This document shows positions 6,965 through 64,000 of a DNA stretch of 64,000 bases, one piece after another. The notes under the pieces were generated by a model, which saw only the letters and a list, made by a program, of their open reading frames with translations, did not search any database and was not told the origin of the DNA. Positions within the stretch are counted from its first letter, which is position 1, and each line of letters starts with the position of its first letter. Position numbers and translations under genes: made by a program. Source of the stretch: Macrostomum lignano (lineage: Eukaryota); NCBI GenBank assembly GCA_002269645.1, contig NIVC01000034.1:1-64000 (forward strand). Reading direction: 5' to 3'.

Positions 6965-8248
6965 TCATTGCGTAAAAGCTAGTTTGCGTGCACGGCAAAT
7001 TTCAGACTCTGCCATTTTTTTGGGCCTGTACTTACTATGTATTTCGCCATAAGGAAATCGGCTTTGTGTCAAAAAAACGTATACTACTGAGCCAAACGCA
7101 CCATTAGACTGCTCTGGGGCATGAGAATCGGCTGTGTTGTAATCTGCGGCAACCTGCTGGGCGGTGCCATCTTGCTGTTGAGTTCCCGCAGGTGGTGGCA
7201 GCTGCTGGGCGGTGCCGTCTTGCTGTTGAATTCCCGCAGGTGGTGGCAGCTGCTGGGCGGTGCCGTCTTGCTGTTGAATTCCCGCAGGTGGTGGCAGCTG
7301 CTGGGCGGTGCCATCTTGCTGTTGAGTTCCCGCAGGTGGTGGCAGCTGCTGGGCGGTGCCGTCTTGCTGTTGAGTTCCCGCAGGTGGTGGCAGCTGCTGG
7401 GCGGTGCCGTCTTGCTGTTGAATTCCCGCAGGTGGTGGCAGCTGCTGGGCGGTGCCGTCTTGCTGTTGAATTCCCGCAGGTGGTGGCAGCTGCTGGGCGG
7501 TGCCGTCTTGCTGTTGAATTCCCGCAGGTGGTGGCAGCTGCTGGGCGGTGCCATCTTGCTGTTGAATTGCCGCAGGTGGTGGCAGCTGCTGGGCGGTGCC
7601 ATCTTGCTGTTGAATGTCCACAGGTGCTGGCTCGCAGATGCCGGGAGGCTGCTCATTAATGATAGCAATGTCGCTGTCCTCAGTCTCCTCACCGGTTGGC
7701 ACTTCGTACAGTAGGCTGCCCGGACTGTCCATGCGAATCTGCTTTCCTCTGATAACCGGGAAATGTCTAGCCGACTGAGCAGCGAGTGGGCGTTGGAATT
7801 GTGGCTGCTGCTGCTGCTCAACAAAGTCATCATCGCTGTTACAGCCGTCTCTAATTACACCGTTTATTAATTGGCTGAGAGCCTGTCGTGCAGCGGTTTG
7901 CTCTCCGGCTATTTGATGTGCTTTCTGCATAACTATGCGTCTAAATGTTTTTATTCCATTGTCTCCAGTAGGTAGCTGCTGGTGTCCGCGGTGAGCTTTG
8001 AATTTTCCTATATTTCCTTCACGCTTTTTTACAACGCCAAACTGCCAACAAGCGCTAAAAATGCGCTTGTTGCACTCTTTTTGACAGCCAGTCTTTAAAA
8101 ATCCAACAACGCATTTGTTTCTCCATTGTTTCGGTGGAAGTGAGAATTTGGAAAGACTGCAGTTATTTTTTACCTCATTTATATACAACGAGGCCAACTC
8201 CTCCGTTGGCGGAGTGAGGGGATAGAACTCCCATCGCCAGAATTTCAT
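6965..8248 (-). CDS. Hypothetical Gln/Pro-rich repeat protein, probably a 5'-truncated Polinton gene
   Basis: 427-aa ORF. The first ~21 codons come from the Helitron-like repeat (same text at about 10843-10905). Contains 10 copies of QQQDGTAQQLPPPAGI. Confidence 0.5.
   Translation of the reverse strand: MKFWRWEFYPLTPPTEELASLYINEVKNNCSLSKFSLPPKQWRNKCVVGFLKTGCQKECNKRIFSACWQFGVVKKREGNIGKFKAHRGHQQLPTGDNGIKTFRRIVMQKAHQIAGEQTAARQALSQLINGVIRDGCNSDDDFVEQQQQPQFQRPLAAQSARHFPVIRGKQIRMDSPGSLLYEVPTGEETEDSDIAIINEQPPGICEPAPVDIQQQDGTAQQLPPPAAIQQQDGTAQQLPPPAGIQQQDGTAQQLPPPAGIQQQDGTAQQLPPPAGIQQQDGTAQQLPPPAGTQQQDGTAQQLPPPAGTQQQDGTAQQLPPPAGIQQQDGTAQQLPPPAGIQQQDGTAQQLPPPAGTQQQDGTAQQVAADYNTADSHAPEQSNGAFGSVVYVFLTQSRFPYGEIHSKYRPKKMAESEICRARKLAFTQ
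7153..7616 (-). repeat. 48-bp coding tandem repeat, about 10 copies
   Basis: Unit gcaggtggtggcagctgctgggcggtgccgtcttgctgttgaattccc = 16 aa. Confidence 0.95.
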
Positions 8249-18000: not shown

Positions 18001-18185
18001 TGCGGCGCTGAAATGAGTGCCTGCGGCACTAAAATGAGTGCCTGCGGCGCTGAAATGAGTGCCTGCGGCGCTAAAATGAGTGCCTGCGGCGCTGAAATGA
18101 GTGCCTGCGGCGCTAAAATGAGTGCCTGCGGCGCTAAAATGAGTGCCTGCGGCGCTAAAATGAGTGCCTGCGGCGCTAAAATGAG
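15078..18185. repeat. 21-bp minisatellite (GGCGCTAAAATGAGTGCCTGC)n
   Basis: Direct reading. Explains the spurious MSACGAK/APQALIL ORFs. Confidence 0.97.
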
Positions 18186-20699: not shown

Positions 20700-20945
20700 A
20701 CCCGAAAATCTGGCCCTCTCTGACCCAAAAAATCCAACCTCTCTGACCCCAAAGATCCGTCTCTCTCTGAACCTAAAGATCCACCCTCTCTGACCCCAAA
20801 GATCCAGACTCTCTGAACCCAAAGATCCGCCTCTGAACCTCAAGATCCACCCTCTCTGACCCCAAAGATCCACCCTCTCTGACCCCAAAGATCCACCCTC
20901 TCTGGCCACAAAAATCCACCCTTTCTGCAACCCCAAAGATCCGCC
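20700..20945. repeat. ~22-bp degenerate tandem repeat (ctctctgaccccaaagatccac)
   Basis: Direct reading. Confidence 0.85.
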
Positions 20946-21849
20946 CCTTCTCCTCCCTATAATTCTAAGGCCTAAAAATCAGTTTCTCTGGTCCATGAGT
21001 TTTAGTGACTGCATTAAAATAAGCCAAATGTGTCCATTCAGCTTGCAGTTCTTAGCATTTCTTTCCAAAAACAGGCAAAATAGAGGATGGTGAAAACACT
21101 GCGAGAACAAACATTCTTGCCTATATTGGAAAAACTTCTAAACACGATTTTCTGCTTTTCCAGTTCCAGCAGCCAGCAGGTGGTACCAGGTGAATATCGT
21201 CCAAGTCAGATCTCGACAAGGGAATATCCGTGAGCCCGCGAAAGGCTACGACTGCCTCGTGTTAAAACATCTGCACGGAATTTTGTTTCCTAAACAGAAA
21301 AACGTTTTTTCTATTTAGAGACACTGACATTTCTTCAGAAAGTCGCGAAACACCTGCGTTTCCCTTGCCTAGTTACGCAAAATTTTCCAAAAATCAGCAA
21401 GGTGTTAATAGCGCATCGATCTGTGCCAACTTTGAAAAAATATTAACTGCATCTGCATCTATAGATGATTGAAGTTTGTTTAAGTTTCTTTCCTAGAATC
21501 GAAAAAAACGAAGGAGCTATTCGAAGATCGACTGCAAGAGAAAAAATAAGGTTGATTGAAAGCAAGCTATAGTTGGGCAATCATCCTTTTTTAAATGATT
21601 CGAGCGTTAGCAGGTGTGTTCTATATTCCTCAATCATTTTGCTAAAAAAATTGAAAAAATTGGAGAGTAACGCTCCTTTTTTACTATACACTATGTAGGT
21701 TTTTAAATTCCGAAAAAGTATAGAGTTGCTTGATCTAAAAGACATCCGAATCCATGCACTAAACATGTCTTAACAAAGCGCCCCACGAGCACTGCTCCAT
21801 CTCCTCCGAACAGAACGCCCCACCCAATAAATACAGTTCTAAAAACCAC

Positions 21850-22800
21850 GGTGCCCACCAACGCAGTGCCCCCCACACTGTGCCCCCCAGCACAGTGCCC
21901 CCCCCAACACAGTGCCCCCACACTGTGCCCCCCAACACAGTGCCCCCAGCACTGTGCCCCCAGCACTGTGCCCCCAGCACTGTGCCCACCAGCACTGTGC
22001 CCCCCACATTGTGCCCCCAGCACTGTGCCCCCACACAGTGCCACCCAGCACAGTGCCCCCCACACTGTGCCCCCAGCACTGTGCCCCCCAGCACTGTGCC
22101 CCCAGCACTGTGCCCACCAGCACTGTGCCCCCCACATTGTGCCCCCAGCACTGTGCCCCCACACAGTGCCACCCAGCACAGTGCCCCCCCACACTGTGCC
22201 CCCACACTGTGCCCCCCACACTGTGCCCCCAGCTTTGTGCCCCCAGCACTGTGCCTCCCAGCACCTGTGCCTTCAGCACTGTGCCCTCAGCACTGTGCCC
22301 CCCAGCACTGTGCCCCCAACACTAACCCCCAGCACTGTGCCCCAACACTGTGCCCCCCACACTGTGCCCCCCCAACACAGTGCCCCCCACACTGTGCCCC
22401 CCAGCACTGTGCCCCCAGCACTGTGCCCCCCAACACTAACCCCCAGCACAGTGCTCCTAACACAGTGCCCCCACACAGTGCCCCCAGCACTGTGCCCCCC
22501 AGCACGGTGCCCCCAACACAGTGCCCCCACCACACTGTGCCCCCCAGCACTGTGCCCCCAGCTCTGTGCCCCCCAACACAGTGCCCCCCCACACTGTGCC
22601 CCCCAGCACTGTGCCCCCAGCACTGTGCTCCCAGCACTGTGCCCCCCAACACTAACCCCTAGCACTGTGCCCCAACACTGGTCCCCCCCAGCACTGTGCC
22701 CCCCAACACTAACCCCAGCACCCAACACTAACACCCAGCACTGTGCCCCAACACAGTGCCCCCCAGCACTGTGCCCCCCAACACTCTGCCCCCCCCCTGC
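21850..22800. repeat. ~15-bp C-rich minisatellite (cactgtgccccccag)n
   Basis: Direct reading. Source of the spurious CAP/TVPP ORFs. Confidence 0.93.
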
Positions 22801-24199
22801 CAGACAGCACCCCAAGCAGAGAGCCCCGTCCCCCTTTTTGAAGGTCGTTTACCGCGGCAAAAACGGGCACTTTACTGTTTTCAAACTTGACTGGCCTCAT
22901 TCAGTTCTGTAAAACTCACGAGTTTCAAAGAAACGTCAACTTATCAAATCCAATACATACACTTCAAAATTAAATTTTGATAAAATCAATGTACTGGGAT
23001 GAAATTTACTCTGGAGTTGGTGTAACAGTGTCAAACAAAACCTATCCCCCATAAATTTGATGGGCTCCCATGCATGATGGGTTTCAGTATTTGTATTTCA
23101 AGGCAGAGCTATATAACCCGATATGGGCCCACCTCTTGATGTGCACAGCTGCGAGATGATAGCGCAACAGGTAGCGAGGAAACCAGATTCCAAGCACGAC
23201 GTGTCGGGAGTCTACGTGGCTCGCTCGATGCATTTCAAAGAAACAAAAAACAGTTCAACAATGGGTGGATGGGAGGATGATTCAGCGTGCAGTAAGTAAG
23301 TGAGTCAGGGAATCAGAAAATATCCAATTACTGTTGCAAATGACCGTTCGTATTGGAACACCCAACAAGGATAGCATGACTGGATCATGCCATGTAATAA
23401 CAATTTTACAATAATTCATTAGATTTCAACAATTCATTTGAACTGGATAATTTCTAACATTTCTTTATCTTTTTTAGCCCTTAATTGGAAATTTAGTGGT
23501 CCTTGACTTAAACAGTAGTTTAATATTGGGCGATATAAGCAGCATAACAGTGCAAACATGCTCTCGTATCGTCCAATTAATTCTATAACCAAAATTAATT
23601 CACCAGATTCCTGATTTATTTTTCCTATTTTTCAATTGGCTTATACATGCGGTATGGGGACTTCACTCGCTCCCTGAAAAGTGGCTATGATCGTAAATTA
23701 TGATTTTACCTGGGCGCCAAATCCCCTGTCATTGTACGAGTATGGGGCTTATATTGAAAATTAGTTAACACATGCAGGTGGATTCGGAAAACTCCGGCCC
23801 ACGAAGCCTCTCTATCCGGCCCTCGGGGTAACTTTGAAACTTCGCAATAGCAATCCGGGCCTATCCAGGCATGTGCTGTCTCTTCTCTGCTCTCCTCTCT
23901 CCCTTAGCTCGTATCTCTCCTCTCATTTGAACTCTAATCAGCGCATTGCATTGTCTGCTATACAGTTTGTCTCTGCAGGTTTGCTTTGAAAAGAAATTTC
24001 TTAATAAATTAATCTGAAAACGAGAATCTAACACCCTGCTATACTCGTAGACTCGAACAAAACCATTTTCGAGTGTTATTGGTTTTAGTCTATACGCAGG
24101 CACACACTCACAAAGGAGTGTACAGCGGCCCTAACTTTATTTATCGTTAGGCATGTACACTTCACTGCGCCTTGGGCTCATGGATTAGCCACAAATTAA

Positions 24200-32768: not shown

Positions 32769-33931
32769 ATCTTACTTATGGAGTACAACAATTGATAATA
32801 AGAGTTCAAAGCTATACTCGCAAATAGGCTTCACTCAGCTGTAAAAATGAATTTATTCAATCTTTTGTTGCTTATCCGTGTGGAAATTTTCAATCGCGTG
32901 GCCCTTGTTTTAGATTTGATGTGATTTTTTAGTACATGCAGCAAACCTTTTCTGGAGCTCACATGAAGCTTAATAAATCCATTTACCATCGTCCGATTGA
33001 AATTAACACTATTTATTGAGCTGAAGTGCTTGTTGTGCCTCGTAAATCAAATACTCGTAAAACATGATTGAAGTTTCGAATCTTAGGCTTTTGAATAATA
33101 TACGTTCTACTTTCACTCGGCTACTTAAATATTTGTCAAGACAATTAAGACTGGCACATGTCGATGTCGCCGAAGACAAACATCTATACGAGTAATTTTG
33201 AAATATGTTTGAAACTTCTTAATATCTGCAATTTCAAGTTTTCGATCGCTCTGTGAAAAACTGAAACGTGACTTTTAGCCCCAAACTTCGAGGTGCGAAG
33301 TGAACGGTAAAGGCCTTTGTTCCTCAAAATATAGCTTTTGTTGTTGATTTGAAAAGCGCCTCTCAGCTTTTAGCACAAACTATAACAAAGACTTCTAGTG
33401 GGCCAAAGAAGATGCATAAAGACCACCCATGCAGGCCCAGTAACAAGAAATCCATTCATTCAAAGATTTTAACACTTCACCACCTCCTATATTTATTATC
33501 GCTATGAGAGAGAGAATTTGGAAACTTCAGTGTCCCCTCCCTGTTGAAGTCGGAATCTTTTTAGAAAAATAAATCTCTCCAAAATTGGCAGCACCGATTC
33601 TGTCTACAGGAGTTGAATGGAGAAATTTAAACAAAATCAGTCTTGTGTCATCGGCAGCAGACAAACACAAGTCTGAATTTTCAATCTGAACAACAGATAA
33701 ACAGAAGAAGCTGGTGGGCAACACTTCTTCAATCGATATTTTACAAAACGAATTCATTTTAAAGCTGATAATGAATTCAGCGATGTGAAGTATCTAAGAT
33801 GTTGTGAAAGGAAGCATCCATTTTTTTAATTTTACAAGTGAATCAACTTTAACAGGAGAGACCAATTTTACGGATTGCAGTTCAACAAGCACTCACTGCG
33901 AGCTTTGGCATCAAAGCCGATCCTTTTAAGC

Positions 33932-34532
33932 CACGGGTTGGCAAACTTTCTACCAGAAGAAAGGGAGAGAGGAGAGGGAATAGAGAAGAGAAATAGGAGA
34001 AAGGGGAGACTAATGAATGAAGGAGAAGAGAGGAAAGAAGAGACGAGAGGAGAGAGGAGGGGAGGGAGAAGAGAGAGGAAAAGGGAGAGGAAAGGAGAGA
34101 GAGGAGGGAAAGGAGAGGAAAGGAGAGAGAGGAGGGAAAGGAGAGGAAAGGAGAGAGAGGAGGGAAAGGAGAGGAAAGGAGAGAGAGGAGGGAAAGGAGA
34201 GGAAAGGAGAGAGAGGAGGGAAAGGAGAGGAAAGGAGAGAGAGGAGGGAAAGGAGAGGAAAGGAGAGAGAGGAGGGAAAGGAGAGGAAAGGAGAGAGAGG
34301 AGGGAAAGGAGAGGAAAGGAGAGAGAGGAGGGAAAGGAGAGGAAAGGAGAGAGAGGAGGGAAAGGAGAGGAAAGGAGAGAGAGGAGGGAAAGGAGAGGAA
34401 AGGAGAGAGAGGAGGGAAAGGAGAGGAAAGGAAGACACAAACCTTGAGCAGGCCCGGATTGCTATTGTGAAGCTTTAAAGGACCTGAGGTCCGGATAGAG
34501 AGGCTTCGCGGGCCGTAGTTCACCGACCCCTG
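33932..34532. mobile_element. hAT-like non-autonomous element with GA-rich tandem core, copy 1
   Basis: Ends CACGGGTTGGCAA...TTCACCGACCCCTG. Shares ccttgagc..ggattgctattgtgaag..agaggcttcgcggg with 53591-54284. Confidence 0.55.
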
Positions 34533-35659
34533 ATTTTTAAGTCTTGGCTTAACCCCAACTTTTACTCTCTTCTTGCAGATGCCACTGATGCCTACTAACA
34601 AGTCCCTTGGCATCCAAGCAACCCACCCCCATGAGCCACGGCATTTCAGCGATTCTCCCAAATGAGCCTTGAAAGTTGTCTGAAAATGGTCGCGATTAGC
34701 TCCCAAGCTCCGATTCTAAGAAACAGAGGAAGTCCATAATAACTGCAGCCGAACACGCGACTAGACATTGTTGCAGTCCAGTTGGTCACGTGACATAAAA
34801 AGGAACCAAAACTAAGCCCCCTTCGCACGCGCGCCTATTGTTTTAAATCAACGTTTATAATAAAAAAACGCGTTACTGCTCTTGCATTTGACAAAGAAAA
34901 CCCTGAACTGGAGAAGGCATTGATCCATCTATCCATCCTTTGCATTGAGTCACTTCAAGCGTTCTCAAACTCAAAGCAGACTGATAATGATCATGCTTGG
35001 AGGACACGTGTCATAATCCTATCACATGGTGCGCTTTTTTGTATTTGAATTGACAGAATTTAGAACAGCTGTGCAGCAAACCTTAGCAATCTGATTCTTT
35101 TCTGAGATGCCTGCCTGTAATAGTTTCCCTAAACTTCTATAGAAACATTTTTTCAGACTTTTCTTCTTTAAAATTGATTACTCGCGCAATGATAGAGACT
35201 TTTTGAGTTGTTTTTGGGGAATGGCACGACAAAATTATTTTATTCTTCAAACAGCAAACCACATAAATGAATGGGCCGGTTTTTGTACAACCAACTACAT
35301 TATGCTATAATTGAGAAATGTGAAATTGAAATCAGCGCTTCTATACTCACTAAGAAATAACATCAAAAGTTCAAATCTGTTAGGAAAAACAACAATAGGA
35401 CTCATCAACACTGTGACCAGTTAGCAAATTATAAAGTATACATTATACTCCACAGCACAAAATGTAGTTAAATTGTAATAATTGATATCAACTATTGATA
35501 AAACCTAAACAGTAAGGACAAGATAAATAGGCTTGAATAAACTTGGATAAATTTGGCTGAAAAAATACAAATTGCACGACAAGCTGTGACTGCACGTTTC
35601 AATGCTTCATTAATTATTACTTCTTGAAGATACGAGTGTCACCCCTAGGTCATGAGGCT

Positions 35660-41260: not shown

Positions 41261-41874
41261 TCAAGCCTGCTCATCCGGCCCAGAGCCAACCTGAGCATGC
41301 CCGATCGAAGCAGCAGCCTCGCTAATAGAATCTGCGGCAGCTTTAGCCGCATCTAATTGACGTTTCTCAGCCTCTTGACGCTTATAATCTGTGTTAAACA
41401 TTAGCGTGTAGAGAATGGCCAACACTGCAGCCATACCAGCGAACACTAGACAGGCCAGGCTGTAGTCCATAGGAGGCGGTACAGCACATGCTGTCAGCGC
41501 TGTCGTGGCTGTAGGAGTCGCCAACACCTGGCCAGCGACCATGAGCACCACGGAGGCCAACTGACCAGCTAGCACAAGAAGGCCAGTGCTCACCGCCTCT
41601 CCAACAGGATGAGTAGCTTCTACGCCCAGTTCCAATGCTATCGGATAGAATGCGAAACCGAATGCGCCAAATGCCGCAATCGAGGAGACTACGGCAGCGT
41701 GAGAATTTGGCCGGCCAATCAAGGCGGCGAATGCGGCTGAGGTGGCCGCGGCCAAGCTGAAGGATACCTGAGAGTGGGGTTGGGGTGGGCCAAGGAATTA
41801 CAGCCCAGAAATCCCACTAATTGCAGAATGTCGAAAATTTCACCAATCACGGCTATCAACCATCTATCTGTCTG

Positions 41875-41920
<46 letters not shown>

Positions 41921-42092
41921 ATCTATCTATCTATCTGTCTATATATTTATGTATCTACCTATCTATCTATCTATCTGTCTATCTATCTATCTATCTAATC
42001 TAATCTATCTATCTATCTATCTATCTACCTATCTATCTATCTATCTGTCTATATATTTATCTATCTACCTATCTATTTATCTATCTATCTAA

Positions 42093-42135
<43 letters not shown>

Positions 42136-42172
42136 CCTATCTATCTGTCTATATATTTATCTATCTACCTAC

Positions 42173-42214
<42 letters not shown>

Positions 42215-42215
42215 G

Positions 42216-42250
<35 letters not shown>

Positions 42251-43149
42251 GTCTATCTATTTATCTATCTATCTATCTATCTACCAAAAACAAACCAAAT
42301 AGGTAACAAAAAGTCTACCTATATTTTCCGCTAAAAATCTACTCGGGATAAGCAAGAGTACTATTTCTGCAGCTGCAAATATTAAATGTACGACACTACT
42401 ACGACTACGACTACGATTACGACTACTACTACTCTACTACTACTACTTCTACTACTACTACAACAACAACTACTACTACTACTGCAACTACTAGTGCTAC
42501 TACTACTGACAATCTAGCTTCAACTGATCGGCAGTGCCCAGTCGCCTGTGACCAGGGGCTGTGCAGGCGGCGATCTGTGACCAGACGCCGCCAACTGCGT
42601 CTCTCGTGGCCTGTCTGGCTACCCAATTAATTACTGTATATGAATTCAATAGTTACATCTAATTATTTACACTTATTTATGCAAAGTTCTCAGTGCTCTG
42701 TATTAATTTAATATTTGTTTTTTTCTACGGGCGTAATTAACTTATTTGTTGAACTTTTCAAGATGCTTAGTCATACACTTCTACGCTTTAAATCTGGTTT
42801 TCTATAGCACCTAACATATTTATTTTTGTGCAAGGCTTTAGCTGCAAGACTTTAACCAATCAGCGTGCTTCAACTCACGTTTTTAACTAATTATACGTAC
42901 ACATCTTTACTCAACACTGCTCAGTGCACCCCCAAACGTTGCATGTATATATTGAAATTATGTTAAAATAACTTCACAGCCAATATATTTGTTTTTAAAC
43001 CCGAATAAATAAACCCTGACGAAGGCCCAGTCCGGGCCGAAATATCGGTTTCTGAATATTCGACAACTAACGTTCTTCAATATTTCCGTGTGTGTGGTTT
43101 GCAGTTTGAAGCTGCCTTTTGCATATCTATCTATCTATCTGTCTATCTG

Positions 43150-43184
<35 letters not shown>

Positions 43185-43194
43185 GTCTATCTAT

Positions 43195-43230
<36 letters not shown>

Positions 43231-43286
43231 TTACCTATCTATCTACCTATCTATCTGTCTATATATTTATCTATCTACCTACCTAC

Positions 43287-43348
<62 letters not shown>

Positions 43349-43349
43349 G

Positions 43350-43400
<51 letters not shown>

Positions 43401-43401
43401 G

Positions 43402-43432
<31 letters not shown>

Positions 43433-43457
43433 GTCTATCTATCTATCTATCTATCTG

Positions 43458-43529
<72 letters not shown>

Positions 43530-45067
43530 CAGTCGTCTCACCTTAGACAGTGTTATAAATCTCTTCGTATAGTCTGCAACAGCTCCGGCCACCCCGGCCC
43601 CAACCAGTCCAGCACCAATCAGCACAGCGCCGCAGATGCCAGCAAACTGATCTGAGTAACCATACGGACACAGAATCTGCTCCAGCAGGGCTGACAATGC
43701 CGTGAACAGGCCCATTCCAGCGCCTACGGCTAGCAACAGTAATCCGAAAGCTCGATTAGTTAAACAGGCACGAATACTCAACCAGAATGTGAGATGCTGA
43801 GCAGCAGCAGATTGATGCAGCTCAGATTCAGCAACACCTGGCGCTTGTCTAGTAAAAATTGACGTAACAACAGAGAACAGCAAAGCAGCTGCCGCAGCCA
43901 TAAAGTACACTAAACTGACTAACGGCAGGTCAGTTTTCGATTTCACTAGCAGAGGCGATAGGATATTAGTGAGCAGAATTCCCAATGGATTGGACATGCT
44001 GCCCAGTGTGTTAGCAGTAGCCCGCTGGCTGACAGGAAATTCTGACGCAACAGCAGTTGGAGAAAACATGAAGAATGGCTGAGCAATGGCAGCTGTAATT
44101 TGGCCAGCCAATGCCAGAGAGAATGATGGTTGAGCTAGTATGGCGCTAGCGTACCGCATGGCGCCACCAGATGCACTGAAAATGGCGCCAATTAGAAGAC
44201 CGGTGCGAACGCCAAGTCTGTGTTGTGGGGAAGATTATGGAGAGTTGGCTTCTGTTAATAGCAATTCCAGTGTCAGTCATAAAAATAATTTTCAATAAAA
44301 TGTACACAGGCATCAAATGGGAATTATTTGGATAGTTATGTGCTCAAGGGGAATTATTTGGATAGTCATGTGCTCAAGGGGAATCATTTGGATAGTCATG
44401 CGCTCAAGGGGAATTATTTGGATAGTCATGTGCTCAAGGGGAATTATTTGGATAGTCATGTGCTCAAGGGGAACTATTTGGATAGTCATGTGCTCAAGGG
44501 GAATTATTTGGATAGTCATGTGCTCAAGGGGAATTATTTGGATAGTCATGTGCTCAAGGGGAATCATTTGGATAGTCATGTGCTCAAGGGGAATCATTTG
44601 GATAGTCATGTGCTCAAGGGGAATTATTTGGATAGTCATGTGCTCAAAGGGAATCATTTGGATAGTCATGTGCTCAAGGGGAATTATCGAGATGGTAGTG
44701 TTCTTGAGGGGAATTCTTATGAAAGCAAATTGCTCCTCAAGGGTATTAGTCAAATAGACAATAAATAAATGATAAATTTTGCAAGTATTTACCTATCCAG
44801 ACAATATGCAGTTGGCAAGCCAAAAACCAGTGAAGCAAGAGGATAGACAAGAGCCAGCCAGTTAACACCATCAGCAGTTACATTATAGAACAACTGAGTA
44901 TAGTCAGCAATGGCTGAATAAGTTATCCATAGGGCAGCATTGGATACATTCAACAAACCCAATGTTAACACTAAGAACCAGCGATTAAAAAGTGTTCTAA
45001 TTGTAGCAGTATCGTTTGAGTCATTGCTGCTATGAACTAGATATACTGTTCCACTGTTGCTCTCCAT
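41261..45067 (-). CDS. SLC49A3: MFS transporter, SLC49 (FLVCR) family, SLC49A3/MFSD7-like; complement(join(41261..41767,43542..44217,44793..45067)), 485 aa
   Basis: [21 protein letters not shown]|LGVR, FSPT...[26 protein letters not shown]. All junctions are GT-AG and in phase. Confidence 0.85.
41865..42510. repeat. (TCTA)n microsatellite followed by (ACT)n
   Basis: Direct reading. Confidence 0.95.
43124..43528. repeat. (TCTA)n microsatellite
   Basis: Direct reading. Confidence 0.97.
44320..44690. repeat. 30-bp intronic minisatellite (tgctcaaggggaattatttggatagtcatg)
   Basis: Direct reading. Confidence 0.93.
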
Positions 45068-50175: not shown

Positions 50176-56453
<6,278 letters not shown>

Positions 56454-57317: not shown

Positions 57318-57387
57318 ATGTCTGCTTTAACTCCTCGAATGTCGGGAGCAATCGTCTGCCTCCTAGTGCTTATCGTCGGTGTACCAG
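57318..57387 (+). CDS. Leader (signal peptide) exon of the MAM-like variable-exon gene
   Basis: MSALTPRMSGAIVCLLVLIVGVP+G, hydrophobic core, strong donor G|GTAAGT, phase 1. Confidence 0.8.
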
Positions 57388-57463
57388 GTAAGTGCAACGC
57401 TTTCGTTGCTTATTAAAATTACCCAATCAAAATATGAAAGACTTTAAATAAAGTATTCAATAT

Positions 57464-57488
57464 TTGGCAAGGCTCGTTGCTCCATTCT
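57464..57488 (+). promoter_or_regulatory. Putative intronic docking site TTGGCAAGGCTCGTTGCTCCATTCT
   Basis: Reverse complement (AGAATGGAGCAACGAGCCTTGCCAA) matches the motif found upstream of each variable exon. Confidence 0.85.
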
Positions 57489-57813
57489 CTATATAGTTGA
57501 AAAATTGGCTAATATGATAAAATAATTTTTTTCGAATGAGTTGCCTGAGTAGTTTAAAAATATTGTCTTTAAATTTTTTTGAATGGGGCTAAGATGCGCA
57601 TTTTTTCACGAATTTGTGATTCATTGTAACAAAACAAAATATGATAATTAATTATCTAATTAATTTGCTTGAATTTATATTTAAAATCAGTAGCTTTAAG
57701 TTATTATAATGCGATTAGGAGTTAACGAGATTCTTTCATATCATACGCTCGTACATGATCAATGTGTTTGCAAAAATTGTTGCTCTAGCGTGCATCGATT
57801 GCGCCTACTCTAG

Positions 57814-58198
57814 GGGTGCAAAATTCACTGGCTGTTTTTGACGATTCGGTGTCAGTTTCGTGCGACTTTGAACAGCAACATTCTGCTGCTAGTAGAAGTT
57901 CGTCAAAAACTGATTCTCAGTTCTGCAACTGGGTAGATTTAGCCTGGAAACCGGGCAGTGCTTGGCAGATTCGCTATCTGACAGAGTTCAACACTCAGGC
58001 TGTCTGTCTGCACGGCGGCTCAGCCAGACTGCAGAGTCCCTGGTGGATTGATTCTGCTAGTAGCAATTTCAGGCGTCAGAGTGCTCAGTGCTTGTCGTTT
58101 GCTTATCACGTAACTCCTAACAATCAATTAGGAGATTCATCGAAGTCTTCTATCGAAACTGACTTACCTCAACTGGCTTTATTGAAGAATACTCACGG
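57814..58198 (+). CDS. Variable exon V1, MAM-like N-terminal part
   Basis: 385 nt, phase 1 to 2. CDFEQ..CNW..W..CL..ARLQSPW..CLSFAY..LLKNTHG. Weak selector GGAGTTAACGAG at 57718-57729. Confidence 0.82.
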
Positions 58199-58490
58199 GT
58201 AAGTTTAGGTTTTTATTAACTCAAGGGAAAAACGTCTCTTGCCAACAGCACAAACTCGTGCATCTTTCTAACGATAGAAATCACTTAGTCAATTGACCTT
58301 TTTTCTCGGAAAGCATCCCTGACGACATGCATTGTTAAAACATAACATTACCACCTCTAACAGGACTTGTGGCTTAGTTTTTTTAGTGATATCGCAATTA
58401 GTCCTTGTATAAGTTTATGGAGCAGCGAGTCTGCTCCGAGATTTCCTACATAAAGTCTACTGCTTATAATTATTAATATGCTTTATGCAG

Positions 58491-58881
58491 TGTTGGAGGC
58501 AGTTGCAGTCAGTACTGGAGCTAGTGTAATGGAAGAAGAGTCCCTATCAACGGATCGCTGGTCAAGCGACGGTTATAATCGGGAATTAGAATGGCGTCGA
58601 TTTGCTATTCATAGCAGTCTGAACGCTGGTTCTCCTGCCTCGTCAGTTAACGTTAGAACCGGATCTGCAATTACGAATAGTTGGTGCACAGCTGGATTGA
58701 TTCCTTCACCGTCGGTTGCTGTGTCTGGTCGGTTGTTAAGCGACTGGGTGCGCAGCGGCCGCGATAGCAGCAATGGACTCTGCTTGTCGTTTAGTTATCG
58801 TATCGACTATGGACCAGAACGACGGAAAAGCGATGTTGACGATACCGCCGCAGTGTTGGCTCTTCTAAGGCGATCGTCGGG
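58491..58881 (+). CDS. Variable exon V2
   Basis: 391 nt, phase 1 to 2, ends LLRRSSG|GT. Selector ATGGAGCAGCGAGTCT at 58417-58432. Confidence 0.8.
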
Positions 58882-59021
58882 GTTAGAAAAATGCTTTGAT
58901 TTATGTTCTGTTTTTTGCATTTGCTTAGCAACGAGCCTTAGCTTAATTGATTGTGTTCGTACTTAGCTTGGCTGGTAACTTGAGAAAATTATTTATAATT
59001 ACCAACGCTTCGATTGCGCAG

Positions 59022-59385
59022 CGAGTTCACTTTCGTCGTCTGGTAGTGCTAACCGAATGGTTATTAAACAGCTCACCTGCAGTGGTAGCGGTTTCGGCAG
59101 TAGTTCTCAATCTTGTAATTGGTTCAACGATATCGGCTATAATACTGAGGCGCATTGGAAGTTGGCTAGCATTGCCGATTCGGATGGTAGCGCTGCCACC
59201 GCTGCCACTTATCGAACCAGTTATTGCGCAGTTGTCACTGGCGGTGCTACTAGCGCACAGCTTGTATCGGCTAGATTTGTTAGCCTATTCATTGCTAGCA
59301 GTTCGGTCAGCGAAGGCTGCATGCAGTTCTCTTACCAGCTAGTTGATCGGCAGAGTCAATTGCAATTGTTGAAGCGCAATTCCGG
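59022..59385 (+). CDS. Variable exon V3
   Basis: 364 nt, phase 1 to 2, ends LLKRNSG|GT. Selector AGCAACGAGCCTT at 58927-58939. Confidence 0.82.
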
Positions 59386-59535
59386 GTATGAGAATTGAAA
59401 AACACTATTATAGCTATATAACTAGTCATTATTAATGTCCTGTTGCAACGAGCCTTGTAGAAAATTAGTCAGAATTGGGAGTTTAGCAGTTACACGATTT
59501 TACAGTGATTGATTGCTGCTTTCACTGTATTTCAG

Positions 59536-59878
59536 CCTTTGGTTTATCAAACAGCAGATTTAGTGGCTTTGACATTAAAGCTTTGCAATGTCAAAGCAAT
59601 GGCGCTGATACATGTCTATGGAGCGATGACAATGGCTACAATACAAAAGCGCACTGGAAGCTGGCTGCTGTGCAGTCTTCGCCAGACTCTCCGTTACACC
59701 GATCAGCTTTCTGCATGGTTCCAATAAATCCTAGCGTCACGGCTGCGACCTCAATTTCGGCTAGATTTGTCAGCTTATTTCTCTCCGAACCGATTGAGTC
59801 CGCCTGCTTGCAGTTTGTGTATCAGTTGGTACCTGCAGCCTCAGCTCCATCGCTCCAGTTGCTTAAACGTCACTCTGG
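59536..59878 (+). CDS. Variable exon V4
   Basis: 343 nt, phase 1 to 2, ends LLKRHSG|GT. Selector GCAACGAGCCTTG at 59445-59457. Confidence 0.82.
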
Positions 59879-59995
59879 GTAAATTGCACAGGATTCCCCT
59901 TTAATTTTTTTTCGAATAGGATGGAGCAACGAAACCTTGATTGACCAAAACTCTGTTGATAATTTAGTAAAATAATGGCTTGAAAAATAATCTAG

Positions 59996-60305
59996 TTACC
60001 GGTCTATCTGATGAAGCTGTAAAACAATTGCACTGCGATAGTGGATCCCGCTGCTATTGGCTAGATGACAGTTACAATACTGACGCCCACTGGCAGTTGG
60101 CTACTGTTACTGAGAGTTCTCGCTTTCAAACGCACTATTGCCTAATTAGAGATGTGTCGGCGCTTAAACGTGTAACTAAGGCTCGTTTTGTTAGCCGCTT
60201 TGTTACTGACAGCAAAGTGGGCTGTTTGCACTTTCGCTATCTGATCAGTCAGCAGGATGATGAGTTAAGTGGTGCGGATCTGCACCTGCTTCGACGGAAT
60301 CGAGG
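59996..60305 (+). CDS. Variable exon V5
   Basis: 310 nt, phase 1 to 2, ends LLRRNRG|GT. Selector ATGGAGCAACGAAACCTTG at 59921-59939. Confidence 0.8.
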
Positions 60306-60474
60306 GTATGGCGCTGGTTTCTTTTGTACTCTTAGTTATGATGCTGCATGATTACTTACTGTTATTTTAAACTTGTTCAAACAAACACGAGCAACGAGCC
60401 TTGACTAGCTTGCAGTTTCTTTATAAACTGATAATTATATAGTCCAGGTTATACATTAGATGGCTCTCTTGCAG

Positions 60475-60760
60475 CAACTAAAATAGATCTGCAGTGCACA
60501 GCTCGAGGTCACTGTGCCTGGCTCAACGACGTTTTCAATCGTCTGCACTGGACCTTGGCAGACGTTGGTGCAGTTGCTGGTGGTAACACTGGCCTGTGTC
60601 TTGTACCTCAGTCGGTGTCGTCATCTTCTGTTGGTAGCGATGCAGGCGGTCAATTTGTCAGTCCGACGGTATTTTCTAAAGTTAGCGGTCAGATGTGTCT
60701 TCAGTTTGTCTACTGGACTGCTGGTCGAGCTAAATTGAATCTATTAAAGCGCAGTTTAGG
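60475..60760 (+). CDS. Variable exon V6
   Basis: 286 nt (alternative same-phase acceptor at 60460), ends LLKRSLG|GT. Selector GAGCAACGAGCCTTG at 60389-60403. Confidence 0.8.
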
Positions 60761-60902
60761 GTATGATTTATCATTTTAGCGATGCTTGAACCGTCAAGAT
60801 ATATTTAGTTAATTTGATTTGATGCAACGAGCCTTGTCTAAAGTTTCTGTTTATAATAGATCTTTAACGACTACATTGACTCTTTCGGAAAATCAATTTT
60901 AG

Positions 60903-61257
60903 CCGGTACATTAGCTGCAGTGTCAGTACCCGAGTTAACGTGCATAAGTACGTCAGCTAGCCCTTGCACTTGGCGCGACGATCAAGATAATATTGACGCT
61001 CATTGGCGCGCCTCCTTGTATCCGTCGGCTGCATTTCAGTCACCGCGATGTCTAGTGCCGGAGCCAAGCGTTTTGTCGGGTTCTAGCTACTCTAGCTCAC
61101 GACCCTTAACCGTAGCTCGGTTTGTTAGCCAATGGCTTACTGGCAGACGTGGTGATATGTGTCTTCAGTTTGCCTATCGAATTGATCAACCGATGGCTAC
61201 TCGTAAAGAGACAACTGTTGCTGGTGCTGGATTAAGCTTGCTGAAACGGAGCAGAGG
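60903..61257 (+). CDS. Variable exon V7
   Basis: 355 nt, phase 1 to 2, ends LLKRSRG|GT. Selector GCAACGAGCCTTG at 60824-60836. Confidence 0.82.
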
Positions 61258-61415
61258 GTATGAGTTGGCTATAAAAATAATGCAAAAAACGTGAAATAAC
61301 TGGAGTAACGAGCTTTTGTCATAAAATTTCAGTTAGTGTCCTTGGAATTTTGGCTTAAATATTGTAAGAGATGCATGTCTAATTATTTAACTGCTAGACT
61401 GTTTTTCCACCTCAG

Positions 61416-61734
61416 CGACGCTTGAACAGTTGTCCTGCCACGCTGGCGGTCACTGCAGTTGGCGTGATGATTTCGACAATAAAGGCGCCCACTGGGTGTC
61501 CGCCCTGGATGCTGCAAGCGACGCGTCCTCGTTAGGCAGCGGCAGATCGCACCTGTGCTTGGTTCAGAGCGGACCTCAGCCGCACAGTTTAGTGACTGGT
61601 CGCTTTGAGAGTCACTGGATTGCTGCCACTAAATCTGATAATGAGCAGCAGTTGTCGCCATCTGTTTGCCTCACGTTCAGCTACTTGACGGCGCCGCGGG
61701 AGGTGTCGCTGAGTTTGCTCAAGCGAAACTGGGG
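61416..61734 (+). CDS. Variable exon V8
   Basis: 319 nt, phase 1 to 2, ends LLKRNWG|GT. Selector TGGAGTAACGAGCTTT at 61301-61316. Confidence 0.82.
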
Positions 61735-61847
61735 GTAAAAGAAATTGAGTTTAAATTTTGTTTACTTTGTGAGCAATGAGCTTTGCCATTAGTTATTGCT
61801 TGTATTTTAAAATTGTTTTTGTGACGCTTGCCTGAACATGAATTCAG

Positions 61848-62205
61848 CTTCTAAAATGGCTGACGAACGTCTTGCTTGTTCTTCGAGCACTTCGGCAATC
61901 TGTGCTTGGCGAAACGATCTTGACAACAAAGACGGCGCTTGGAAAATGACGCTGGAGCCGCCTGGCTTTAGCCGCGCAGCACTCTCGTCTTACTGTTTGG
62001 TTCCTATCAGGCGTCCAATGTCATCTGGCAGGAGTTCTGTCAGTCTAGTTGCTGAATTTCATAGCGCTTGGGTGTCTGGAGGGACGACAGGATCAGACCC
62101 TAGTGCTGGTCAATTGTGTCTTCAGTTTGCATTTAGAGTGAAGGATTCGTTCCATTCTTCTAGTGCCAGCGCGGCAAAACTGGTTCTGCTAAAACGCGTC
62201 TCTGG
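61848..62205 (+). CDS. Variable exon V9
   Basis: 358 nt, phase 1 to 2, ends LLKRVSG|GT. Selector GAGCAATGAGCTTTGCCA at 61771-61788. Confidence 0.82.
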
Positions 62206-62331
62206 GTAGGAGTTTTTGCATCATGTTTATTCCCGCTTCTTTAGGCGAGCCTTGCCAAGTTTATTGAATTTGATAGCACACCTGTGGTAGCTGAAATTGT
62301 AACCGTTTTTTATGTCTTTTTTTCAAATAAG

Positions 62332-62674
62332 TTACCCACTGCGTTTCGGTTGACTGCTCCTCAAAATTGCCAAATGTTTGCACATGGAGCGACGGTCAAT
62401 TCAATCGAGCTGCCAACTGGAAGGTCGCAATTGACTCCAATAGTCGCTGTGCTTCCTATTGCCTCGTTCCAAATAAGATTAGGTCTCAAGCGATGACGTC
62501 ATCACGTAGCTCTTCGGCACAGGCTTACACTGGAAGCTTTCTTAGTGGCTGGATTGTCGCTGAAGAGTCAAGACAGAATCCAATGTGTCTGCAATTCAAT
62601 TACAAGTTTGTTCTAGCAGAGCCAGTAATATCCAAGCCTGGATTGCAACTGGCTTTGTTAAAGCGTACATTTGG
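62332..62674 (+). CDS. Variable exon V10
   Basis: 343 nt, phase 1 to 2, ends LLKRTFG|GT. Selector GGCGAGCCTTGCCAA at 62244-62258. Confidence 0.82.
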
Positions 62675-62796
62675 GTATGTTTTTGGATTAAATTGGAGCA
62701 ACGAGTCTTATTAATCAATTTTTAGCTTGATAAAAAATGCATCAAGTTTAATTAGTATATGTAAAGCATCTAGAACTCGTAAATGCCCTCTTATAG

Positions 62797-63115
62797 CCGT
62801 CTCAATTGATTGCTCATCGACCTCGCCTACTTTTTGCACTTGGAGCGATTCACCTTTTAATCGGGCAGCCAATTGGAAGGCCGCAATCGATCCCAGCGTT
62901 CGTAGCGGTGGTAGAAGCGCGTCCTATTGCTTGATTCCAAATAGACCAGTAGCTACAGAAGACACTACTCACAGCGGTAGCTTTCTTAGTAATTGGATAA
63001 CCAAAACGAAAGAATCCGGTTCGCCAGAGCAGCAGATGTGTGTTCAGTTTGCGTACAAGTTTATTGGTTCGCCAATGACTAGAATGCATCTGGCTCTGTT
63101 AAAGCGTTCATATGG
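62797..63115 (+). CDS. Variable exon V11
   Basis: 319 nt, phase 1 to 2, ends LLKRSYG|GT. Selector TGGAGCAACGAGTCTT at 62694-62709. Confidence 0.82.
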
Positions 63116-63245
63116 GTAAGGTCTAAAACCTGTCAGGTAAAAGTGAGCTTTTTACAGTAGAGTTTCTTTGAGCAACGAGTCCTTGTGTATGCTGCTTTTT
63201 CATTTTTGCTATAGGTACGTTTGTACTTGTTTTATTGCGTTATAG

Positions 63246-63576
63246 TGACATGTCTTGCCTCTTCGATTAATTGCTCGTCCAATTCGCCTATGCTCTGCTC
63301 GTGGAGCGATTATCCATTCAATCGAGCCGCTAATTGGAAGGCAACAATCGATTCTAATAGTCGTTCGTCCTCTTATTGTTTAATTCCTAATGCGGCTTTG
63401 GTGATGCCTATTAATGCAGCGTCTGAACAAGGATTTGCGGCCAGCTTTATTAGCGGTTGGATCGCTGGAAAAAACCAACGCTCGATGTGCTTGCAGTTTG
63501 CGTATAAATTTTTAGTGTCATCTCAATTGCCTGAACGTAGGCAGTCTTCTCTGGCATTATTGAAACGTTCATTTGG
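63246..63576 (+). CDS. Variable exon V12
   Basis: 331 nt, phase 1 to 2, ends LLKRSFG|GT. Selector GAGCAACGAGTCCTTG at 63170-63185. Confidence 0.82.
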
Positions 63577-63872
63577 GTATGCTTTTATTTCAACTGATGC
63601 GATAAAAAAATGAGTACAAAAAGGTTCTGCTGCCCCCATAGATTAAAAAATTTCGTCAGGAGCGATGCATTGAAAAGCCTTAAAATGCGTCGTATGTTTG
63701 GTCATGAAGCTTTACTCCGGGCCTCTGTGAGACTGTATATTCGGGTGCAACAAAAAACTACTCCGTCTCTTAGAAGTAAAAGTTTTGAGATGGAGCAATG
63801 AGCCTTTATAATGTTAATAGAGTGGAAGTATGATGACGCATGATGCATTTTCTCTGAAAATAATTACTATAG

Positions 63873-64000
63873 CTACTTCGTCGACACATTTAATTGACTG
63901 CTCATCGAGCTCTCCTATGCTTTGCGCATGGAGCGATGATCCTTACAATCGAGCAGCCAATTGGAAGGTGGCCATCGACCCCAGAACTGGCCACTCGTCC
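63873..64000 (+). CDS. Variable exon V13 (runs off window)
   Basis: Phase-1 acceptor, ATSSTHLIDCSSSSPMLCAWSDDPYNRAANWKVAIDP. Selector ATGGAGCAATGAGCCTT at 63790-63806. Confidence 0.8.

What the first reader, a model, noticed from the sequence alone, without database searches (positions are those of the whole stretch)
57814..63576. All 12 complete variable exons are phase 1 in, phase 2 out (3n+1), so tandem inclusion is frame-incompatible
Lengths 385, 391, 364, 343, 310, 286, 355, 319, 358, 343, 319 and 331 nt are all 1 mod 3. Each starts after AG at codon position 2 and ends GG|GT. Joining V1 to V2 gives a stop at 58522-58524. An ordinary multi-domain repeat protein needs symmetric exons, so this independently argues for mutual exclusivity, with NMD as a likely fail-safe.
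Basis: seen in the sequence. Interest (0 to 1): 0.85.

Follow-up and report, generated by a model that had tools for sequence, protein, structure and literature searches.

The report
Frame-locked alternative exons, flatworm MAM receptor
A flatworm (Macrostomum lignano) cell-surface receptor gene carries a row of interchangeable exons whose lengths (3n+1) let only one of them per mRNA give a readable protein. This is a known safety logic, found here in an apparently undescribed Dscam-like exon-choice system.

Summary
All 12 exons have the stated lengths (all 1 mod 3), start after AG, end GG|GT and are open only in the phase-1-in frame. The V1→V2 join gives TAG at 58522-58524.

The window is Macrostomum lignano contig NIVC01000034.1. 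The fetched downstream sequence adds V13 and V14, also 3n+1. Next comes not a constant exon but a second array of about 17-20 short variable exons (W). These open in phase 2 as predicted, close in phase 0 and are also 3n+1. An 88-nt constant exon and a transmembrane/tail exon follow.

The RNA-seq-based GenBank model PAA93052.1 equals exon 1 + V1 + W3 + C1 + last exon exactly. One V alone is a sub-threshold half MAM domain. V + W + C1 gives a full-length MAM match.

Every V read after another V has 6-15 stops, so any multiple inclusion is nonsense. Each array has its own docking site and complementary selectors about 60-85 nt upstream of most members, a Dscam exon-6-type layout. V arrays with the same phase-2 donor occur in the sampled Schistosoma and Echinococcus loci.

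The frame argument is textbook and NMD is untested. I found no paper describing the locus.

The parts
57318..57387 (+). Exon 1: ATG plus signal peptide, 70 nt, ends in phase 1, donor GTAAGT
   Evidence: It is the first exon of PAA93052.1.
57458..57492 (+). Docking site 1 in intron 1 (core CAAGGCTCGTTGC, 57468-57480), about 70 nt downstream of the exon 1 donor
   Evidence: it is the only reverse-complement copy of the selector core in the window; duplex energy with cluster-1 introns averages -32.6 kcal/mol, against -16.4 (sd 3.2) for shuffled introns.
57814..58198 (+). V1, 385 nt, phase 1 to 2. It has no clear selector and is the V used in the annotated mRNA.
58417..58432 (+). Selector upstream of V2 (ATGGAGCAGCGAGTCT)
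58491..58881 (+). V2, 391 nt, phase 1 to 2. The exon 1 to V2 junction is used in UniRef model P0001.
58522..58524 (+). TAG, the first premature stop if V2 is read after V1
58927..58953 (+). Selector upstream of V3
59022..59385 (+). V3, 364 nt, phase 1 to 2
59445..59466 (+). Selector upstream of V4 (exact GCAACGAGCCTTG)
59536..59878 (+). V4, 343 nt, phase 1 to 2
59918..59939 (+). Selector upstream of V5
59996..60305 (+). V5, 310 nt, phase 1 to 2
60389..60403 (+). Selector upstream of V6 (exact core)
60475..60760 (+). V6, 286 nt, phase 1 to 2
60816..60841 (+). Selector upstream of V7 (exact core)
60903..61257 (+). V7, 355 nt, phase 1 to 2
61301..61328 (+). Selector upstream of V8
61416..61734 (+). 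V8, 319 nt, phase 1 to 2
61771..61788 (+). Selector upstream of V9
61848..62205 (+). V9, 358 nt, phase 1 to 2
62246..62266 (+). Selector upstream of V10
62332..62674 (+). V10, 343 nt, phase 1 to 2
62694..62709 (+). Selector upstream of V11
62797..63115 (+). V11, 319 nt, phase 1 to 2
63170..63185 (+). Selector upstream of V12
63246..63576 (+). V12, 331 nt, phase 1 to 2
63787..63806 (+). Selector upstream of V13
63873..64000 (+). V13, cut by the window end. The full exon is 63873-64221 in the source record, 349 nt, 3n+1.
   Evidence: locus L001

Best explanation
The 12 exons are members V1-V12 of a 14-member array of mutually exclusive exons. The gene is a Macrostomum lignano type I membrane protein (GenBank PAA93052.1, BOX15_Mlig029915g2) whose ectodomain is a single MAM domain.

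Shown:
- Exon 1 (signal peptide) ends in phase 1.
- Each V encodes the N-terminal ~60% of the MAM domain and runs from phase 1 to phase 2.
- A second array of short exons (W1-W20, outside the window) encodes the next ~50 residues and runs from phase 2 to phase 0.
- An 88-nt constant exon (phase 0 to 1) finishes the domain.
- A last exon gives the transmembrane helix and cytoplasmic tail.
- Every internal exon is 3n+1, and V+W+C1 together are 3n. The MAM module as a whole is an ordinary class 1-1 module cut by two intradomain introns.
- Only exon 1, one V, one W, C1 and the last exon in that order read through. Any extra V or W, or skipping an array, shifts the frame into stop codons that are present in almost every exon.

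Inferred:
- Choice of one V is made by competing RNA pairing. A single docking site sits just downstream of exon 1. It can pair with only one of the selector sequences that lie 56-87 nt upstream of V2-V14, as in Dscam1 exon 6. A second, non-cross-reacting docking site ahead of W1 does the same for the W array.
- The frame design is a second layer. Mis-spliced mRNAs with two V exons carry a stop at least three exon junctions upstream of the 3' end. They would therefore be NMD substrates or give truncated, signal-peptide-only products.
For: Lengths, phases and open frames.

Stops in both wrong frames of every V.

W exons have 4-11 stops when read after another W, except W2, which has none.

Exact reconstruction of PAA93052.1 from exon 1 + V1 + W3 + C1 + last exon. 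That annotation derives from StringTie/TACO assemblies of RNA-seq (PMC5730564).

Pfam: a V alone is sub-threshold and covers profile positions 1-93. V+W+C1 covers 1-158 at 34-50 bits against a cut-off of 26.4.

V paralogues have saturated synonymous sites (pS 0.65-0.92) but pN of only 0.25-0.5. They are therefore old coding exons under selection.

Docking and selectors. Cross-control: docking site 1 pairs with cluster-1 introns at a mean of -32.6, against -15.7 with cluster-2 introns. Docking site 2 gives -32.7 with cluster-2 introns against -21.3 with cluster-1 introns. Shuffled introns give about -16 to -18 (sd about 3.4).

Database models that string V exons together do not join them at the mapped V splice sites. 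P0001 enters V3 and V11 at internal positions, and P0111 ends many V segments short of the ...G donor. I did not map P0111 to its genome.

The GG|GT phase-2 donor is conserved in 14/14 V-like exons sampled in S. haematobium, in the six of eight S. bovis V-like exons that the script reached, and in the five V-like exons flagged in E. granulosus.
Against: Only one isoform (V1+W3) is documented by an RNA-based model here. No read-level data were available, so use of V3-V14 and the absence of Vn-Vm junctions are inferred.

V1 and W1 have no clear selector.

Only one docking site exists per array, so no covariation test is possible within this genome. A quick k-mer scan found no shared selector in the S. 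haematobium array.

NMD was not tested.

W2 has no stop in the frame used after another W, and W19 has none in the frame used directly after exon 1. The frame lock is therefore not absolute within every single exon.
Confidence: 0.85

Rival explanations
1. The 3n+1 design is only a by-product of duplicating a sub-domain exon that happened to lie between a phase-1 and a phase-2 intron. RNA pairing alone enforces single choice, and NMD plays no meaningful role.
For: The phase is inherited by tandem duplication and is shared by arrays in distant flatworms. The docking/selector signal is strong and specific. The literature notes that NMD cannot be the main mechanism for large clusters (PMC6071210).
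Against: This does not conflict with frame-incompatibility itself, which is shown. Stops occur in both wrong frames of all 14 V exons, so mis-spliced products are nonsense whether or not they are degraded.
Confidence: 0.35
2. Only V1 is a real exon. V2-V14 are decaying relics of old duplications and are never spliced in.
For: The single RNA-based GenBank model uses V1.
Against: All 14 V frames are open (about 2e-3 chance each) while the other frames hold 1-15 stops. pN is far below a saturated pS. Splice sites and 13 selectors are retained. Another gene model uses the exon 1 to V2 junction.
Confidence: 0.05
3. The V exons are included in tandem to make a multi-MAM-repeat protein, as many database gene models of the family suggest.
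For: Models such as P0001 (715 aa) and S. curassoni P0111 (1941 aa) concatenate many V segments.
Against: The real splice sites give a frame shift and early stops. P0001 keeps frame only by entering V3 and V11 at internal positions, and P0111 ends many V segments before the conserved ...G donor. Each V is only 60% of a MAM domain, and the missing C-terminal part exists once per mRNA.
Confidence: 0.03
4. Each V is an alternative first coding exon with its own promoter or spliced-leader acceptor, in the style of protocadherin or chelicerate sDscam.
For: M. lignano trans-splices many mRNAs (PMC5730564).
Against: The V exons have no initiator ATG or signal peptide of their own and start in mid-codon after an acceptor. 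The only signal peptide is in exon 1, whose phase matches all V exons. Docking and selector geometry links exon 1 to the V acceptors.
Confidence: 0.03

Closest known systems
Drosophila/arthropod Dscam1 exon 6 cluster (Graveley 2005 docking site/selector model)
   Same: A tandem array of homologous exons, each encoding part of one extracellular domain. One docking site lies in the intron after the upstream constant exon. One complementary selector lies upstream of each variant. All selectors compete for the same docking core. Two independent arrays in one gene give combinatorial diversity.
   Different: The domain is MAM, not Ig, and the phylum is Platyhelminthes, not Arthropoda. Two arrays build consecutive parts of the same domain. 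There are 14 x ~17 variants rather than 48. The first member of each array lacks a selector. No functional data exist, and no repressor equivalent to hrp36 is known.
FGFR2 IIIb/IIIc and other non-3n mutually exclusive exon pairs, where NMD removes double-inclusion or double-skip mRNAs (Jones et al. 2001, cited in PMC6071210)
   Same: Exon lengths are not multiples of three. Double inclusion or skipping shifts the frame and creates premature stops.
   Different: This is a large array, not a pair. The usual objection is that four 3n+1 exons restore the frame. It does not apply here, because each out-of-frame V already contains stops. NMD was not tested here.
Competing-RNA-structure mutually exclusive exon genes outside Dscam (14-3-3xi, Mhc, MRP1, srp, vertebrate ATE1 and dynamin 1)
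   Same: Intronic docking and selector complementarity controls the choice of one exon.
   Different: From my own knowledge, most of those are small clusters of 2-8 exons in conserved housekeeping or muscle genes. This is a large, fast-diverging receptor ectodomain array.
MAM-domain adhesion receptors (RPTPmu/kappa, meprin, neuropilin, MDGA)
   Same: The assembled V+W+C1 sequence matches Pfam MAM over its full length and, weakly, the meprin A MAM domain in the PDB. It sits in a type I membrane protein.
   Different: The protein has a single MAM domain with no other ectodomain modules, and that domain is hypervariable through splicing. Homophilic binding is only a hypothesis.

Membership tests
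Mutually exclusive exon cluster (criteria of Pillmann/Kollmar, PMC3228551) | Neighbouring exons that are homologous | tested here: met
   Alignment A1: 20-28% identity to V1 with invariant Cys and Trp columns. Closer pairs reach 49-61%.
Mutually exclusive exon cluster (criteria of Pillmann/Kollmar, PMC3228551) | Similar length, differing by whole codons | tested here: met
   286-391 nt, all 3n+1.
Mutually exclusive exon cluster (criteria of Pillmann/Kollmar, PMC3228551) | Same splice-site type and same reading-frame phase at both ends | tested here: met
   AG|...GG|GT, phase 1 in and phase 2 out for 14/14.
Mutually exclusive exon cluster (criteria of Pillmann/Kollmar, PMC3228551) | Transcripts contain exactly one member | tested here: inconclusive
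   One RNA-seq-based model contains only V1 and only W3 (PMC5730564). No read-level data for other members.
Dscam exon-6-type docking/selector system | Single docking site in the intron downstream of the upstream constant exon | tested here: met
   57458-57492 holds the only reverse-complement copy of the core in 64 kb.
Dscam exon-6-type docking/selector system | A selector complementary to the docking site upstream of each variable exon | tested here: met
   13 of 14 V exons (V2-V14), 56-87 nt upstream of the acceptor. Mean energy is -32.6 kcal/mol against -16.4 (sd 3.2) for shuffled introns. V1 has none.
Dscam exon-6-type docking/selector system | Selectors overlap on the docking site, so only one can pair at a time | tested here: met
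   All selectors align to overlapping parts of the same 35-nt docking sequence.
Dscam exon-6-type docking/selector system | Disrupting or restoring the pairing changes exon choice; evolutionary covariation | not testable with these tools
   Needs minigenes or transgenics, or genomes of other Macrostomum species. A k-mer scan of the S. haematobium array found no shared selector.
NMD-coupled mutually exclusive splicing | Exon length not a multiple of three, so double inclusion gives a premature stop | tested here: met
   Every V read after a V has 6-15 stops.
NMD-coupled mutually exclusive splicing | Double-inclusion transcripts are made and are stabilised when NMD is blocked | not testable with these tools
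   Needs RNA data and UPF1/SMG1 knock-down.
MAM domain (Pfam PF00629) | Full-length profile match above the gathering score | tested here: met
   V+W+C1 scores 34-50 bits against a cut-off of 26.4 over profile positions 1/5/8-158, in five combinations. A V alone gives 11.5-23.6 bits in five of the six V exons tested and no match in the sixth.
MAM domain (Pfam PF00629) | MAM fold (beta-sandwich) | tested here: inconclusive
   The single-sequence AlphaFold model was poor, with mean pLDDT 42. A PDB profile search hit only the meprin A MAM domain, E = 0.002.
Clustered alternative first exons (protocadherin, UGT1A, sDscam) | Each variable exon has its own start codon, signal peptide and promoter | tested here: not met
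   V exons begin mid-codon after an acceptor. The only ATG plus signal peptide is in exon 1.

The most novel reading that the evidence does not exclude
Flatworms possess a Dscam-like hypervariable surface receptor. A single MAM domain is assembled from one of 14 V exons and one of about 17 W exons, roughly 240 isoforms in M. lignano. Choice is made by two orthogonal docking/selector RNA systems, and the exons are frame-locked by a 1-2-0-1 phase ladder. The V array and its phase-2 donor are retained in free-living and parasitic flatworms (Schistosoma and Echinococcus shown here; Paragonimus, Spirometra and others by protein hits only). This suggests a phylum-wide cell-identity, self-recognition or immune code. 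Current annotations hide it because their gene models string V exons together.
Probability: 0.6. Interest if true: 0.85.

Novelty: new member of a known kind. Interest (0 to 1): 0.65.

Why it matters
The frame argument itself is standard. Non-3n mutually exclusive exons with NMD as a back-up are textbook.

What matters is where it is found. Large exon arrays that diversify a receptor by mutually exclusive splicing are, as far as I know, essentially an arthropod Dscam1 story. Here the same logic appears in a different domain (MAM) and a different phylum:
- tandem sub-domain exons;
- one docking site with many selectors;
- two independent arrays;
- a frame lock.

Relatives occur in major human and livestock parasites, where current annotations mis-assemble the gene.

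If confirmed, it gives a second, independent system for studying how RNA pairing picks one exon out of many. M. lignano is a suitable organism because transgenesis (PMC5730564) and, from my own knowledge, RNAi are available. It also gives a candidate flatworm surface-diversity molecule.

Tried and rejected
- Word-indexed protein search with V4 alone and with the constant region returned nothing. It did not return P0017 either, although that protein is in the collection. This looks like an index limitation, not absence.
- Look-up of contigs encoding P0001 returned none.
- A frame-blind acceptor rule (the AG ending the longest AG-free run) agreed with only 7/14 V and 9/18 W acceptors. It is too crude, so I did not use it as independent support.
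- The single-sequence AlphaFold model of PAA93052.1 had mean pLDDT 42 and is unusable.
- A k-mer search for a shared selector in the S. haematobium array found nothing convincing.
- I first read the cluster-2 selectors as lying downstream of each W. In the two long introns after W16 and W17, where the two readings can be separated, the selector stays about 60-80 nt upstream of the next acceptor. The long intron after W5 does not fit: its selector lies 14 nt from the W5 donor. On balance I read them as upstream selectors, as in cluster 1.
- Eight literature searches combining MAM, mutually exclusive splicing, flatworm/Schistosoma/Macrostomum, or the gene name found no description of this locus.
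- I considered an exact look-up of ten hypothetical isoforms in the protein collection. I did not run it, because the prior was low and a negative result would say nothing.

Full report
**Observation**

I re-derived the 12 exons from the sequence. With the donors at the conserved ...GG|GT and the stated lengths, all 12 are preceded by AG and followed by GT. All are 1 mod 3. All are free of stops when the last base of the upstream exon is prefixed.

The upstream exon is 57318-57387. It holds an ATG and a hydrophobic signal peptide, is 70 nt long and has a GTAAGT donor, so it ends in phase 1.

The V1-V2 join gives TAG at 58522-58524. Extending the test to every exon:
- Read after one other V (phase 2 in), each V has 6-15 stops, the first 4-55 nt into the exon.
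- Read after two V exons (phase 0 in), each V has 1-8 stops.

Any multiple inclusion is therefore nonsense. This answers the usual objection that in big clusters four 3n+1 exons restore the frame (PMC6071210).

Stop triplets make up 5.2% of positions here, so a 115-codon open frame has about a 2e-3 chance per exon.

**What the locus is**

A search with the concatenated V translations hit one protein. It is a Macrostomum lignano UniRef model (P0001) that fuses the upstream Beta_elim_lyase gene to exon 1, V2 and truncated pieces of V3 and V11.

A profile of the V exons was then searched against 1.8 billion representative proteins. It found P0017, which is GenBank PAA93052.1 (422 aa, BOX15_Mlig029915g2).

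Its encoding contig is NIVC01000034.1 of assembly GCA_002269645.1. The fetched locus L001 (record 47318-83323) is identical to the window over the 16,683-nt overlap. The window is therefore record positions 1-64000, and L001 shows 19 kb beyond the window end.

**Downstream structure** (record coordinates, which equal window coordinates)

- V13 is 63873-64221 (349 nt) and V14 is 64374-64719 (346 nt). Both are 3n+1.
- A second array of short exons, W1-W20, runs from 65399 to 72470. Each starts AG|N-TCN-TGY (reading G|SC...) and ends GAYTTYAAR|GT (...DFK|). They run from phase 2 to phase 0, and the intact ones are 133-205 nt, all 3n+1.
- Some W members look degenerate. W10 and W14 have no in-frame acceptor and appear frame-shifted. 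W6 is only 91 nt. W8 needs an alternative acceptor. W20 is atypical.
- Constant exon C1 is 72565-72652 (88 nt, phase 0 to 1).
- The last exon is 72758-73323. It encodes the transmembrane helix and a Pro-rich tail.

Exon 1 + V1 + W3 + C1 + last exon translates exactly to PAA93052.1. The GenBank annotation of this assembly comes from genome-guided assembly of RNA-seq with StringTie and TACO, not from ab initio prediction (PMC5730564). This model is therefore RNA-level support for three things: the V1 boundaries, skipping of V2-V14, W1-W2 and W4-W20, and a phase-2 opening of the next exon.

The next exon is not constant but belongs to a second variable array.

**Why one V and one W**

A V alone matches only positions 1-93 of the 158-position Pfam MAM profile. 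Five of the six V exons tested score 11.5-23.6 bits, below the 26.4 cut-off, and the sixth gives no match. Five arbitrary V+W+C1 combinations give a full-length MAM match at 34-50 bits.

A profile of such ectodomains hits only the MAM domain of meprin A among PDB sequences, and weakly (E = 0.002).

V+W+C1 is a multiple of three (633 nt for V1+W3+C1) and is flanked by phase-1 introns. From general knowledge of exon-shuffling rules, the whole module is the usual class 1-1 extracellular module. The 3n+1 exons are sub-domain pieces of it.

This is independent structural support for one V and one W per mRNA.

**The V exons are functional**

Between V paralogues, synonymous sites are saturated (pS 0.65-0.92) while pN is 0.25-0.5. 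dN/dS is about 0.25 where it can be computed. Old relics would not have stayed open.

**How the choice is probably made (inferred)**

Cluster 1:
- The 13-mer GCAACGAGCCTTG, or a close variant, lies in the intron upstream of V2-V14, 56-87 nt from the acceptor.
- Its only reverse-complement copy in the 64-kb window is at 57468-57480, 80 nt downstream of the exon 1 donor.

Cluster 2:
- A second docking sequence lies in the V14-W1 intron (TTGGCAGCGGGGAAGACTTCAAGGTACCTTGCA, record 65027-65060).
- It pairs with TCTTCCCCGCTGCCAA-like elements in the introns that follow W1 to W18.

The two systems do not cross-react:

| Docking site | Cluster-1 introns (mean kcal/mol) | Cluster-2 introns (mean kcal/mol) | Shuffled own-cluster introns (mean, sd) |
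|---|---|---|---|
| 1 | -32.6 | -15.7 | -16.4 (3.2) |
| 2 | -21.3 | -32.7 | -18.4 (3.6) |

This is the geometry of Dscam1 exon 6. V1 and W1, which directly follow the docking sites, have no clear selector.

I did not test function, and no covariation test is possible with one docking site per array.

**Role of the frame**

With 14 and about 17 alternatives, decay of wrong products cannot be the primary mechanism. It can only clean up errors.

A double-V mRNA has its stop in the second V, with at least three exon junctions downstream. By the general exon-junction rule it would be an NMD target. This is established knowledge about NMD applied by inference, and I did not check the flatworm NMD machinery here.

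Skipping an array is also out of frame, because exon 1 ends in phase 1 and the W exons open in phase 2. The lock has small gaps: W2 has no stop when read after another W, and W19 has none when read directly after exon 1.

**Other flatworms**

The V profile finds gene models made of strings of V-like segments in:
- trematodes: Paragonimus, Schistosoma, Heterobilharzia, Calicophoron;
- cestodes: Spirometra, Dibothriocephalus, Hydatigera, Echinococcus, Hymenolepis;
- a monogenean: Protopolystoma.

I checked splice sites in three species:
- S. bovis: eight V-like open frames. The six the script reached before it stopped all end GG|GT.
- S. haematobium: 14 of 14 V-like exons end GG|GT. The one V with an annotated acceptor is 403 nt, which is 3n+1.
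- E. granulosus: the five V-like exons flagged end GG|GT.

The phase-2 donor is therefore conserved in these species.

The concatenated models are not joined at the V splice sites. P0001 enters V3 and V11 at internal positions. The S. curassoni model P0111 (1941 aa) ends many V segments before the conserved ...G donor. This is what frame-incompatible exons would force on a gene predictor. I did not map P0111 to its genome.

I found no shared selector in the schistosome array with a simple k-mer scan. I did not look for a W array there.

**Comparison with what is known**

The criteria used to predict mutually exclusive exons are homology, similar length, and the same splice sites and frame (PMC3228551). 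All are met here.

The idea that non-3n mutually exclusive exons are policed by NMD is established (Jones et al. 2001, cited in PMC6071210). The finding as worded is therefore a correct application of known logic.

Eight literature searches found no paper on a MAM-domain exon array, on mutually exclusive splicing of such a gene in flatworms, or on Mlig029915. The library covers open-access papers only.

**Verdict**

- The agreements are not independent.
- The next exon is variable, not constant.
- NMD is untested and can only be a back-up.

The phase rule alone is ordinary. The locus it belongs to is a new member of the Dscam-type class in a new domain and a new phylum, and it deserves follow-up.

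Noticed in passing
L001 18082-25153 (record 65399-72470, beyond the window end): A second array of about 17-20 short variable exons (W1-W20) encodes the middle of the MAM domain. All run from phase 2 to phase 0 and are 3n+1. With the 14 V exons this would allow roughly 240 isoforms.
   Followed up: yes
L001 17710-17743 (record 65027-65060): Docking site 2 contains GAAGACTTCAAG|GTACC, which looks like the 3' end and donor of a W exon (...DFK|GT). It may be a relic exon turned into a docking site. That would fit the tandem-duplication origin of competing structures proposed in PMC6071210.
   Followed up: partly
window 57501-57813 and L001 17403-18081: The first member of each array (V1 and W1) has no clear selector. 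The only annotated mRNA uses V1, so the first exon may be the default choice.
   Followed up: partly
L001 19675-19765, 20199-20361, ~20869-20964, ~21883-21993: Several W members look degenerate. W6 is truncated to 91 nt. W8 is frame-shifted relative to its close paralogue W9. W10 and W14 have no in-frame acceptor.
   Followed up: partly
window 50179-56453 (+), upstream neighbour: A Beta_elim_lyase (threonine-aldolase-like) gene ends about 870 nt before the MAM gene's ATG. UniRef model P0001 fuses the two, and the locus tag ends in 'g2'. They may be one transcriptional unit cut by spliced-leader trans-splicing, as PMC5730564 describes for about 7% of units.
   Followed up: no
L002, L003/L004, L005 (S. 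bovis, S. haematobium, E. granulosus): Homologous V-exon arrays occur in parasitic flatworms. Public gene models split them or string them together (for example S. curassoni, 1941 aa). These loci probably need re-annotation.
   Followed up: partly
window 742-6750 (+): A run of long intronless ORFs includes an integrase with a chromodomain (3213-4373; Pfam rve and Chromo). It is probably a mobile element. The other ORFs had no Pfam match.
   Followed up: partly
window 7084-8248, 16775-18255, 21703-22912, 33868-34706, 43088-43655, 51849-52955, 53610-54299, 54912-55517: Many long minisatellite-like tandem repeats give spurious ORFs open in several frames.
   Followed up: no
window 41261-44159 (-): An exon of a Major Facilitator Superfamily transporter gene lies on the minus strand (Pfam MFS_1 for 43515-44159). 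A neighbouring minus-strand ORF at 41261-41755 had no Pfam match.
   Followed up: partly
L001 25441-26006 (record 72758-73323): The cytoplasmic tail of the receptor is Pro-rich and contains PPPRY (a PPxY-type motif) and PAPPVP. This hints at WW or SH3 adaptor binding.
   Followed up: no
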